A DNA stretch of 63,668 nt, counting the filler, from Reticulomyxa filosa (Eukaryota > Protista > Foraminifera): the NCBI GenBank assembly GCA_000512085.1. It is 19 parts of 19 records of this genome, joined end to end, with 100 filler letters (N's around TTAATTAATTAA, not from the genome) between each part and the next. Parts side by side here need not be neighbours in the genome. Positions count along the whole stretch, not along the records: positions 28,668 to 29,814 come from ASPP01045024.1; 18 more parts are not named here. One strand, 5' to 3'. How positions within the stretch are numbered: position 1 is the stretch's first letter; each line of letters starts with the position of its first letter. Under the pieces are notes generated by a model, which saw nothing but the letters and a program-made list of their open reading frames with translations, had not been told where the DNA came from and did no database searches. Below, in pieces: positions 27,961 through 29,814 of the stretch. The translations under genes and the position numbers were made by a program.

Positions 27961-29169
27961 CAATGTCAAGCGCAGTCCAATGATAATGACAACGACGATA
28001 ACGATAACGCAGTTCATGTTCATTCTACTCATTTGTCAATTACTTTAATACATTGGACTGGTATTGTGTGCGCCGATATTTGATCCACTGCTGTTGGTGT
28101 CGCGGAAGAGAGGTAGTATTGTTGCACCATTTATTGCAAAAAGCAACAAGTCGTACCAATCGATAATGGATCGACGATTCAAAAGTCGCTCTGTTATTTG
28201 CCGAACAAAACAAAAGCTGGATATCTGCAATGTGTTGGTGGCGCTGGACCCTGCTGAGTGCAATATTTGTGTCAGCGGTCGAGCCCCCCCTCTCTATTCT
28301 TTCATCTCACCTCTCTTATCTCAAAGACGCCGTCGCTGTGGATATGAGCGAATTGTTCGGTTATCAAAAACCGAATCACTCAAATTCGAAAAGTGGAATG
28401 GTCTGCCATTGACAAGACCGCCATCCAAAAAAGTAGTAGCTCTAGTGGAAGAGCCTTTCAATGATAATAGCTTCCCCAAGTAACAGTTCAATTGTTCCAA
28501 ATAACGGGATGGTTGATGGAAGCATTATCATTGAAACCAGCGCGCGCATTCCAACACAAGACTTCAANNNNNNNNNNNNNNNNNNNNNNNNNNNNNNNNN
28601 NNNNNNNNNNNTTAATTAATTAANNNNNNNNNNNNNNNNNNNNNNNNNNNNNNNNNNNNNNNNNNNNAAGACAAACAAACAAAAGCATATTTTTATATAA
28701 ACAAAAACGTAGATATAAATTTACAAACCCTTTTTTTTTTTCTCCATACGGGGTGGACTTCAACCACTTATTTTTTTTCATAGATGAAGTGTGTTAACAC
28801 TTTTTTTTTTTTCTTTGGATACTTGTGGCGGCGCTATTATAAAACAAATCACAATTTAATATATTAAAAAAAATAAATAAATAAATTACAAACCATTTAA
28901 ACCCCTTTCGGGGACTGGTTCCTCTCAATGCTCTTGCGCCGTCGTCAATGAATAACATCATTTTTTCTTTGGTCCGATGATTTTTCTTCGGCGATTTTTG
29001 GCACTAGATGATCGGCACCATTGGTGGAGTAGCGCCCGAGCATGTCAAATATTTGGTCTATGTATTTTTGTAAAAAGACAATCTAATAACAATATTACAC
29101 ACTATATATATATATATGCATTTGTATATGTACAGATACAATATTTATTTATACATGTATAAGATATAC

Positions 29170-29814
29170 CCAATGGCTGTTGATATATCTGCCAGTCCAT
29201 GTGTATGCCATCACGCTTTGCTCACGATTTACTGTTTGCATGTTGTCGCATGTGGATCCATGACATTCCATCGCCACTCCTTCCAATACACAAAAACCCA
29301 ATGCTCGTCCATGACCTCTGGTGAGTCTTGGTCACACACATCTCACCGAAGAGCGCCCACACAAAGCATATAACGGCGCACAATCGCCCATGAAAGATGA
29401 TGCATCCACATTGGCTAATCGCAAATCGACTGGGTTGGTCCATTGTCTCTATCATCCATTTGTGCCAAAAAAAATAGAAGCCATTAAAGTTCATTAATTG
29501 CGAAACTTGAATATGCGTTTGTTGCCTTCGGGACCGGTGCGTCGGCTTCAGATACAATTGTACTATAAATTCCGAGCCATGACATTGTAAATAGTGATAT
29601 GAATTTGAATTGGGGCCAAATTGGAACAGTCGCCGAGTCGAAAGGGTGCGACACATACATGGACAATCCCATATCACATTGTAAAGAATCAACCTTTCAG
29701 CAAATTTCGATTGGTCGTTGTTGTGAGTAATAAGCGTCACATATTGTCCATTCACACCATCCTTGCTATCATCACTTGCTTTAAATTTCCAATTGCGCAA
29801 GCATTCGTTATCAA
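29170..29814 (-). pseudogene. Pseudogene with tandem HECTD1-type SUN/F5-8 (galactose-binding-like) domains and a 75-bp internal inversion
   Basis: First domain: CLRNWKFKASDD..VTLITHNNDQS-[inverted]-RLFQFGPNSNSYHYLQCHGSEF. Second: FGTNG**RQWTNPVDL..VDASS..GRSSVRC..SGDGMSWIHMRQHAN. In-frame stops, frameshifts and a deletion are present. Confidence 0.75.

What the first reader, a model, noticed from the sequence alone, without database searches (positions are those of the whole stretch)
29624..29716. 75-bp in-frame inversion in the middle of a HECTD1-type SUN/F5-8 domain
The minus-strand frame reads LRNWKFKASDD..THNNDQS-[KFAERLILYNVIWDCPCMCRTLSTR]-RLFQFGPNSNSYHYL. The bracketed 25 codons do not fit the family. 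The opposite strand of exactly 29633-29707 reads PSRKGATHTWTIPYHIVKNQPFSKF. Flipping it gives HNNDQS-PSRKGATHTWTIPYHIVKNQPFSKF-RLFQFGPNSN, which matches the family pattern HxxDxSLxxxGxTxTWxl...frxxRixQxGxN. The flanks are an imperfect inverted repeat, GAACAGTCG (29624-29632) / CGATTGGTC (29708-29716). Both orientations keep the frame open.
Basis: seen in the sequence. Interest (0 to 1): 0.8.

Follow-up and report, generated by a model that had tools for sequence, protein, structure and literature searches.

The report
Small inversion in a dead foraminifer gene
One decayed copy of a repeated gene, most likely from the foraminifer Reticulomyxa filosa, has an 83-87 base stretch flipped in place between two short inverted repeats; this is a clean example of a known kind of mutation in a gene that was already broken.

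Summary

**Orientation.** Five paralogous contigs of the Reticulomyxa filosa assembly GCA_000512085.1 (L001, L002, L003, L004, L007) carry the tract in the opposite orientation. That orientation matches the protein-family consensus. After flipping, the tract is 79/83 identical to L001 and 78/83 to L007; the flanks are about 90-92% identical.

**Score gain.** A profile built from 39 distant domain copies scores the window frame at 49.3 bits as it stands and 80.6 bits when flipped. With phmmer, 38 of 39 relatives gain, by 51 bits on average.

**Boundaries.** The inner mismatch of the 9-bp inverted-repeat arms has changed sides and the outer mismatch has not. The breakpoints therefore lie in a CA/TG dinucleotide, and the tract is 83-87 bp (29629-29711 at least, 29627-29713 at most), not 75 bp.

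**State of the gene.** The copy is a pseudogene. It shares a 74-bp and a 1-bp deletion with its closest paralogues. It also has five private indels, starting with a frameshift at 29577/29576. The open frame in both orientations carries no functional meaning.

**Mechanism (inferred).** Replication-based inversion at short inverted repeats, by double template switch or microhomology-mediated break-induced replication.

**Gap.** No sequencing run was listed, so read support at the junctions is untested.

This is a new example of a known kind, of modest interest.

The parts
29629..29711 (.). Inverted tract, minimum extent (83 bp). The maximum extent is 29627-29713 (87 bp). The breakpoints lie within the CA (29627-29628) and TG (29712-29713) dinucleotides.
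   Evidence: The reverse complement is 79/83 identical to L001 and 78/83 to L007. Minus-strand BLAST hits to L001, L002, L003, L004 and L007 occur only here. The inner arm mismatch is exchanged and the outer one is not.
29624..29632 (+). Inverted-repeat arm GAACAGTCG. It is the downstream arm in the gene's orientation.
   Evidence: It is 7/9 complementary to 29708-29716. Paralogues L001 and L007 have CGATTGTTC at this site and L002 has TGATTGTTC, in gene orientation, so the repeat existed before the inversion.
29708..29716 (+). Inverted-repeat arm CGATTGGTC. It is the upstream arm in the gene's orientation, where it reads GACCAATCG.
   Evidence: Paralogues L001, L002 and L007 have GACCAGTCG here. 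The window has the A that belongs to the other arm.
29577..29814 (-). Remnant of the C-terminal half of a galactose-binding-like (SUN / F5-8 type C-like) domain. It is cut by the contig edge at 29814 and stays in the ancestral frame down to 29577.
   Evidence: phmmer hits to 39 representatives cover query residues 1-80. It aligns to family profile positions 104-174.
29576..29577 (-). Private 1-bp deletion (CATGG^CTCGG). It takes the open frame out of the ancestral frame straight after ...YLQCHG.
   Evidence: L001, L007 and L002 all have one more base here. P0002 continues LGIYSTIVSGADSP, which the window encodes in another frame.
29338..29537 (-). Stretch holding four more private indels: a 12-13-bp deletion near 29536, a 1-bp deletion at 29505/29504, a 2-bp deletion near 29473, and a 2-bp insertion near 29340.
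   Evidence: Alignments with L001, L007 and L002.
29222..29307 (-). Relic of the second tandem domain. It has a 74-bp deletion at 29307/29306 and a 1-bp deletion at 29279, both shared with L001 and L007. A private 1-bp deletion at 29225 creates the TGA at 29222-29224.
   Evidence: Alignment with L002, the most complete copy.
28668..29221 (-). Rest of the repeated unit: more decayed coding remnants, AT-rich spacer and a conserved non-coding end. It is collinear with L007 and L002.
   Evidence: BLAST and alignment.

Best explanation
The piece is one decayed copy (pseudogene) of a multi-copy gene of the foraminifer Reticulomyxa filosa, or of a very close relative. The gene once encoded tandem galactose-binding-like (SUN / F5-8 type C-like) domains. 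After this copy split from its nearest paralogues, a single mutation replaced 83-87 bp by its exact reverse complement, in place. The ends of the tract lie inside a pre-existing imperfect 9-bp inverted repeat (ancestrally GACCAGTCG ... CGATTGTTC). The joints fall in the shared CA/TG dinucleotide. As a result the inner mismatched base of each arm moved to the other arm, while the outer mismatch stayed where it was. The most likely mechanism is replicative. Either the polymerase switched to the opposite strand at one arm and back at the other (template-switch type '1-3-2-4', which only inverts a fragment), or a break was repaired by microhomology-mediated break-induced replication. The inversion scrambles 25 codons that cover a core beta-strand, a short helix and the start of the next strand of the jelly roll. 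The common ancestor of this copy and its nearest paralogues was already broken, so the event is neutral. What is shown: the inversion itself, its direction, its extent, the earlier existence of the repeat, and the pseudogene state. What is inferred: the molecular mechanism, the species, and that the inversion exists in the organism and not only in the contig.
For: **Orientation and extent.** Window and L001 align at over 90% identity except in the tract, which is reverse-complementary. The only minus-strand BLAST hits to all five R. filosa paralogue loci are at the tract. After flipping 29629-29711 the tract is 79/83 identical to L001 and 78/83 to L007, and the two arm bases match all informative paralogues.

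**Direction of change.** All five paralogues carry the other orientation, and so do 39 distant domain copies. The family profile gives 49.3 bits as it stands and 80.6 bits flipped. With phmmer 38 of 39 targets gain, mean +51 bits.

**Species.** All paralogue contigs belong to GCA_000512085.1, which PMC6783311 names as R. filosa.

**Pseudogene state.** There are shared 74-bp and 1-bp deletions and five private indels. No predicted protein of this frame exists in either protein collection.

**Structure.** In the AlphaFold model of P0002:22-200 (pLDDT 85) the tract is residues 124-148. That covers strand 130-134, helix 137-140 and the start of strand 147-152.

**Mechanism.** Short inversions flanked by short, often imperfect inverted repeats, and the two replicative models, are described in PMC5453318 and PMC8755829.
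Against: No sequencing run was listed for the piece, and a scan of metagenome contigs for one junction found nothing. The inversion therefore rests on a single 1,147-bp contig, and the tract ends only 101-103 bp from the contig edge. The classic template-switch model predicts that an imperfect inverted repeat becomes perfect (PMC8755829). Here the arms stay 7/9, so the switches would have to sit in a 2-bp microhomology. That fits break-induced replication at least as well. The two replicative routes cannot be told apart from sequence alone.
Confidence: 0.85

Rival explanations
1. The inversion is an assembly or library artefact, such as a doubly chimeric read extending the end of a low-coverage contig, and does not exist in the organism.
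For: There is only one contig and no run was listed. The tract lies about 100 bp from the contig end. The assembly is highly fragmented: 50,809 scaffolds with N50 of 3.6 kb.
Against: An in-place inversion needs two joints that return exactly to a collinear sequence. The 103 bp beyond the tract are collinear with L001 and L007 at 90-92% identity. The exact repeat segments (CA, TCG) are far shorter than any assembler word, so graph ambiguity cannot flip the tract. Both joints fall symmetrically in a pre-existing inverted repeat, as in natural micro-inversions.
Confidence: 0.1
2. The tract is a programmed, reversible DNA switch, with recombinase-mediated inversion between the two arms toggling the domain between two protein versions.
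For: Both orientations keep an open frame, and the tract is bounded by inverted repeats.
Against: The arms are only 9 bp and imperfect. The copy carries many frame-breaking indels and deletions. The inverted version scores like unrelated sequence against the family, and no protein with it exists in the collections. All five other copies have one orientation. The antisense frame of 25 codons is free of stops simply because the sense strand has no TTA, CTA or TCA codon, which is not rare. Threading the window frame through paralogues shows that stops are sparse here in any case.
Confidence: 0.01
3. There is no inversion. The resemblance of the opposite strand to the family pattern is chance, and the 25 codons are simply a diverged or insertion segment.
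For: Pfam finds nothing in the window on either strand.
Against: The reverse-complemented tract has 79/83 nucleotide identity to L001, and 22 of the 25 residues are identical to P0002. Flipping gains 31 bits against a profile built without any R. filosa sequence.
Confidence: 0.005

Closest known systems
Short template-switch mutations, event type '1-3-2-4', which only inverts a fragment (Loytynoja & Goldman 2017, PMC5453318)
   Same: A short fragment is replaced in place by its reverse complement. No new repeat is created, the flanks stay collinear, and the switch points sit at short complementary sequences.
   Different: Those events were catalogued in human-chimpanzee alignments and are mostly a few tens of bases long. 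This one is 83-87 bp, lies between paralogues of a foraminifer, and the mechanism is only inferred.
Definite micro-inversions flanked by perfect or near-perfect inverted repeats, explained by microhomology-mediated break-induced replication (Potapova, Kondrashov & Mirkin 2022, PMC8755829)
   Same: The copy is 'pure' and precise. The flanking inverted repeats abut or overlap the boundaries. The arms are short and imperfect and are not made perfect by the event.
   Different: Their set spans 17-33 nt, so this tract is about three times longer. Here the exchange of an arm mismatch places the joints to within 2 bp.
Tandem galactose-binding-like domain proteins (Pfam Sad1_UNC PF07738 / F5_F8_type_C PF00754), often with a C-terminal SPRY domain
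   Same: The window's ancestral frame aligns to profile positions 104-174 of a roughly 195-residue domain that is repeated 3-7 times in relatives. Relatives hit Sad1_UNC, F5_F8_type_C and SPRY. The fold resembles CBM32, APC10/DOC, the muskelin discoidin domain and SUN2.
   Different: The window copy itself reaches no Pfam threshold and is broken. A specific link to HECTD1 was not tested.

Membership tests
Micro-inversion flanked by short inverted repeats | The tract is the reverse complement of the homologous sequence at about the same identity as the flanks | tested here: met
   79/83 (95%) identity to L001 and 78/83 to L007 after flipping. Flanks are 90-92% identical.
Micro-inversion flanked by short inverted repeats | Both flanks are collinear with the homologue (in-place event, not a transposition or a chimera) | tested here: met
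   103 bp on one side and more than 400 bp on the other are collinear.
Micro-inversion flanked by short inverted repeats | An inverted repeat at the boundaries existed before the event | tested here: met
   The un-inverted copies L001 and L007 have GACCAGTCG ... CGATTGTTC (7/9 complementary). L002 is 6/9.
Micro-inversion flanked by short inverted repeats | The direction of change is fixed by outgroups | tested here: met
   Five paralogues and a profile of 39 distant domains all have the other orientation.
Micro-inversion flanked by short inverted repeats | The junctions are supported by independent reads | not testable with these tools
   No run was listed. A junction scan of metagenome contigs found no match.
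Galactose-binding-like domain (Pfam F5_F8_type_C / Sad1_UNC) | The sequence reaches the family's Pfam threshold | tested here: not met
   The window frames give no Pfam hit, and P0002 gives none either. Of the 40 aligned domain copies, 26 hit Sad1_UNC and 25 hit F5_F8_type_C at E<=0.01. Membership is therefore by transitive homology (E down to 8e-25).
Galactose-binding-like domain (Pfam F5_F8_type_C / Sad1_UNC) | Beta jelly-roll fold | tested here: met
   This was tested on the paralogue P0002:22-200, not on the window itself. The AlphaFold model has pLDDT 85. Foldseek hits include CBM32, APC10, muskelin discoidin and SUN2, at E about 1e-5 and TM about 0.5.
HECTD1-type SUN domain specifically | Closer to the HECTD1 domain than to other galactose-binding-like domains | not tested
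   No HECTD1 sequence was available by reference. The profile search of PDB sequences returned only a GH92 mannosidase CBM.
Functional protein-coding gene | Uninterrupted ancestral reading frame through the domain(s) | tested here: not met
   The inversion, a private 1-bp deletion at 29577/29576, four more private indels, shared 74-bp and 1-bp deletions, and a TGA at 29222-29224.
Programmed invertible DNA switch | Long, well-matched recombination sites, a recombinase, and both orientations present in a population | tested here: not met
   The arms are 9 bp and 7/9 matched. The contig is too short to hold a recombinase gene. Population data are not available.

The most novel reading that the evidence does not exclude
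The many decaying repeat copies of the R. filosa genome might accumulate replication-based micro-inversions at an unusually high rate, or this one might be polymorphic among the many nuclei of the plasmodium. Paralogue families of this genome would then be a natural record for measuring template-switch or break-induced-replication events outside primates and bacteria. Nothing here shows an elevated rate: one event was seen in about 18 kb of compared paralogue DNA.
Probability: 0.08. Interest if true: 0.45.

Novelty: new member of a known kind. Interest (0 to 1): 0.3.

Why it matters
It shows that a tool-free reading of raw sequence can correctly spot a micro-inversion from protein-family logic alone. 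It also gives a well-resolved example in a rhizarian protist, because the exchange of one arm mismatch, but not the other, places both joints within a 2-bp microhomology. For annotation, it explains why this contig yields no gene model and warns that the long open frame is not a gene. It does not reveal a new mechanism or function.

Tried and rejected
- **Pfam on both strands of the window:** no hit.
- **Word-index protein searches** with the 79-aa frame and with residues 26-70 of the 196-aa frame: nothing, so no predicted protein carries the inverted version within the length ranges searched.
- **ESM Atlas feature search:** no usable hit.
- **Sequencing runs:** none listed, so read laying could not be used.
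- **Rfam:** only sub-threshold chance hits, for example mir-297 on a TA/TG-rich stretch at 32 bits against a gathering score of 90.
- **Metagenome contig scan for one junction:** no match.
- **P0030:** the only target that scored better with the as-is frame. It is a chitin-binding CBM_14 repeat protein whose weak chance match is multiplied by its repeats, so it was rejected as a relative.
- **Selection on the open frame:** I asked whether the 197-codon open frame across several frameshifts points to selection. Threading the same frame through L001, L002 and L007 gives only 1-2 stops each, so it does not.
- **Glockner et al. 2014 genome paper:** not held, so the sequencing method is not cited.
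- the flipped protein has no reference and was not passed to the Pfam, PDB or big-database tools.

Full report
**What is in the sequence.** The piece (28668-29814, 37.5% G+C) has one long minus-strand open frame, 29222-29812. The plus strand of 29633-29707 translates to PSRKGATHTWTIPYHIVKNQPFSKF. The flanks GAACAGTCG (29624-29632) and CGATTGGTC (29708-29716) are 7/9 complementary. The repeat finder also lists an overlapping 13-nt imperfect pair, I17. The window gives no Pfam hit on either strand, and no Rfam family reaches its threshold.

**Relatives and origin.** A full phmmer search of the 196-residue frame against 1.84 billion representatives gave 39 hits. The closest is P0002 (220 aa, 68% identity in one stretch). 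It reads ...NNNDQS-PSRKGATHTWTIPYNIVMNQTFSKF-RLFKFGPSSNSYHYLQCHG-LGIYSTIV.... This is the un-inverted version, and 22 of its 25 residues are identical to the window's opposite strand.

P0002 is NCBI 'hypothetical protein RFI_30912, partial [Reticulomyxa filosa]'. It lies on contig ASPP01027093.1 of GCA_000512085.1, an assembly that PMC6783311 names as R. filosa. Four more copies come from the same assembly: P0020, P0016, P0034 and P0040 (RFI_31165). The piece is 90-92% identical to L001 and L007 over coding and non-coding DNA. I therefore infer that it is a paralogue in the same genome or in a very close relative. That assembly is very fragmented, with 50,809 scaffolds, N50 of 3.6 kb and 30.5% repeats.

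**The inversion at DNA level.** The window's minus strand and L001 align at over 90% identity except across the tract, where identity collapses. BLASTN finds the tract on the opposite strand of L001 (93.5% over 93 bp), L007 (92.5% over 93 bp), L002 (77% over 93 bp), L003 and L004. There is no other minus-strand hit.

The multiple alignment shows the ancestral arms. In gene orientation the upstream arm is GACCAGTCG (L001, L002, L007). The downstream arm is CGATTGTTC in L001 and L007, and TGATTGTTC in L002. The window has GACCAATCG and CGACTGTTC. Number each arm 1-9 from the outside inwards. The mismatch at position 6 has changed sides, while the mismatch at position 3 has not. The joints therefore lie at positions 4-5, the shared CA/TG, and the flipped DNA is 83-87 bp (29629-29711 to 29627-29713).

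Flipping 83 bp gives 79/83 identity to L001 and 78/83 to L007. The arm codons change synonymously (CAG/CAA and TTG/CTG).

**Direction and significance.** All five paralogues have the other orientation, and so does the wider family. An HMM built from 39 domain copies of distant proteins, with no R. filosa sequence, scores the 79-residue frame at 49.3 bits as it stands and 80.6 bits flipped. In the flipped version the tract aligns to the conserved L..KGathtW......f.fRi.qtG.Nsn block. Pairwise phmmer scores rise for 38 of 39 targets, by 51 bits on average. The exception, P0030, is a 14-fold CBM_14 chitin-binding repeat protein with a weak chance match multiplied by its repeats. No predicted protein with the inverted version was found.

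**What the gene was.** Relatives are proteins of 800-1,700 residues or more. They carry 3-7 tandem copies of a domain of about 195 residues. Many also have a C-terminal SPRY domain, and one has IBR/RING. Of the 40 aligned domain copies, 26 hit Pfam Sad1_UNC and 25 hit F5_F8_type_C. A profile search of PDB sequences finds only a CBM32-like module of a GH92 mannosidase.

An AlphaFold model of P0002:22-200 (pLDDT 85.4, pTM 0.84) is a beta jelly roll. Its best structural matches are CBM32 modules, APC10/DOC, the muskelin discoidin domain and SUN2. 'HECTD1-type' was not tested. In the model the tract is residues 124-148. It covers strand 130-134 (THTWT), helix 137-140 and the start of strand 147-152, so the inversion would destroy the fold.

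**Pseudogene state.** Against L002, the most complete copy, the window, L001 and L007 share two lesions:
- a 74-bp deletion at 29307/29306;
- a 1-bp deletion at 29279.

Their common ancestor was therefore already broken in the second domain.

The window also has private lesions:
- a 1-bp deletion at 29577/29576, straight after ...YLQCHG; the ancestral continuation LGIYSTIVSEADAP is in another frame;
- a 12-13-bp deletion near 29536;
- a 1-bp deletion at 29505/29504;
- a 2-bp deletion near 29473;
- a 2-bp insertion near 29340;
- a 1-bp deletion at 29225, which creates the TGA at 29222-29224.

The frame stays open for 197 codons, but this is not a sign of selection. Threading the same frame through L001, L002 and L007 meets only 1-2 stops each. 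The antisense of the 25 codons is open simply because the sense strand has no TTA, CTA or TCA codon. The paralogues' own NCBI gene models are also fragments of decayed copies: L001 has an in-frame TGA, and L007 has its own 1-bp deletion inside the tract.

**Mechanism (inferred).** In-place inversion of a short fragment, bounded by short and often imperfect inverted repeats, is a described class of mutation.
- Loytynoja & Goldman's four-point template-switch model includes an event type, '1-3-2-4', that only inverts a fragment (PMC5453318).
- Potapova, Kondrashov & Mirkin found that every definite human-chimpanzee micro-inversion (17-33 nt) is flanked by inverted repeats of 3-75 nt. They argue that short or imperfect arms fit microhomology-mediated break-induced replication better than a double template switch, because template switching tends to make imperfect repeats perfect (PMC8755829).

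Here the arms stay 7/9 and one mismatch is simply exchanged. The event was therefore a 'pure' inversion with joints in a 2-bp microhomology, or 5 bp if one mismatch is allowed. Both replicative routes remain possible. Homologous recombination is unlikely on 9 imperfect bases, and nothing supports a site-specific recombinase.

**What is not shown.** No sequencing run was listed for the piece, so read laying could not be used. A scan of metagenome contigs for one junction found nothing. The eukaryotic assembly cannot be searched as DNA with these tools. The inversion therefore rests on one contig, and its nearer end is about 100 bp from the contig edge. An artefact would need two exact, symmetric joints inside a pre-existing inverted repeat, with a return to collinear sequence. 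I rate that at about 10%.

The flipped protein has no reference. It was built and scored only inside scripts and was not sent to the Pfam, PDB or database tools.

**Verdict.** It is a new example of a known kind of mutation, of modest interest.

Noticed in passing
window 28668-28918: The non-coding end of the piece holds a CCCCGAAAGGGG hairpin at 28902-28913 and long A runs. It is 79-82% identical to L002:2785-3030 and L003:2569-2812, which is better conserved than the domain-coding parts (72-77%). It could be a conserved untranslated or intronic element, or part of a larger repeat unit.
   Followed up: no
window 29222-29812 (minus strand): The 197-codon open frame crosses five private indels and leaves the ancestral frame at 29577. 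Paralogues threaded through the same frame show only 1-2 stops each, so the long ORF is chance and not a gene.
   Followed up: yes
L001 (ASPP01027093.1) and L007 (ASPP01027343.1): The NCBI protein models RFI_30912 and RFI_31165 are built on decayed copies. L001 has an in-frame TGA after the first domain. L007 has a 1-bp deletion inside the tract, so its model reads out of frame after ...FSNF. Both share the 74-bp deletion.
   Followed up: partly
L006 (Logan SRR32617133 contig, P0024): An intron-free 404-residue relative whose DNA is 80% identical to window 29743-29814. It may be a transcript of an intact family member of R. filosa or a relative. The contig ends before the tract, so it says nothing about orientation.
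   Followed up: no
window 29104-29172: Rfam mir-297 match at 32 bits against a gathering score of 90, on a TA/TG-rich low-complexity stretch that is also a TRF array. This is a chance match.
   Followed up: partly
P0030 versus window 29660-29782 (minus-strand frame): The as-is frame, including part of the scrambled segment, weakly resembles each unit of a CBM_14 chitin-binding repeat protein. The summed score gave E=1e-5 in the big search even though it is a chance match. This is a caution for repeat-rich targets.
   Followed up: yes
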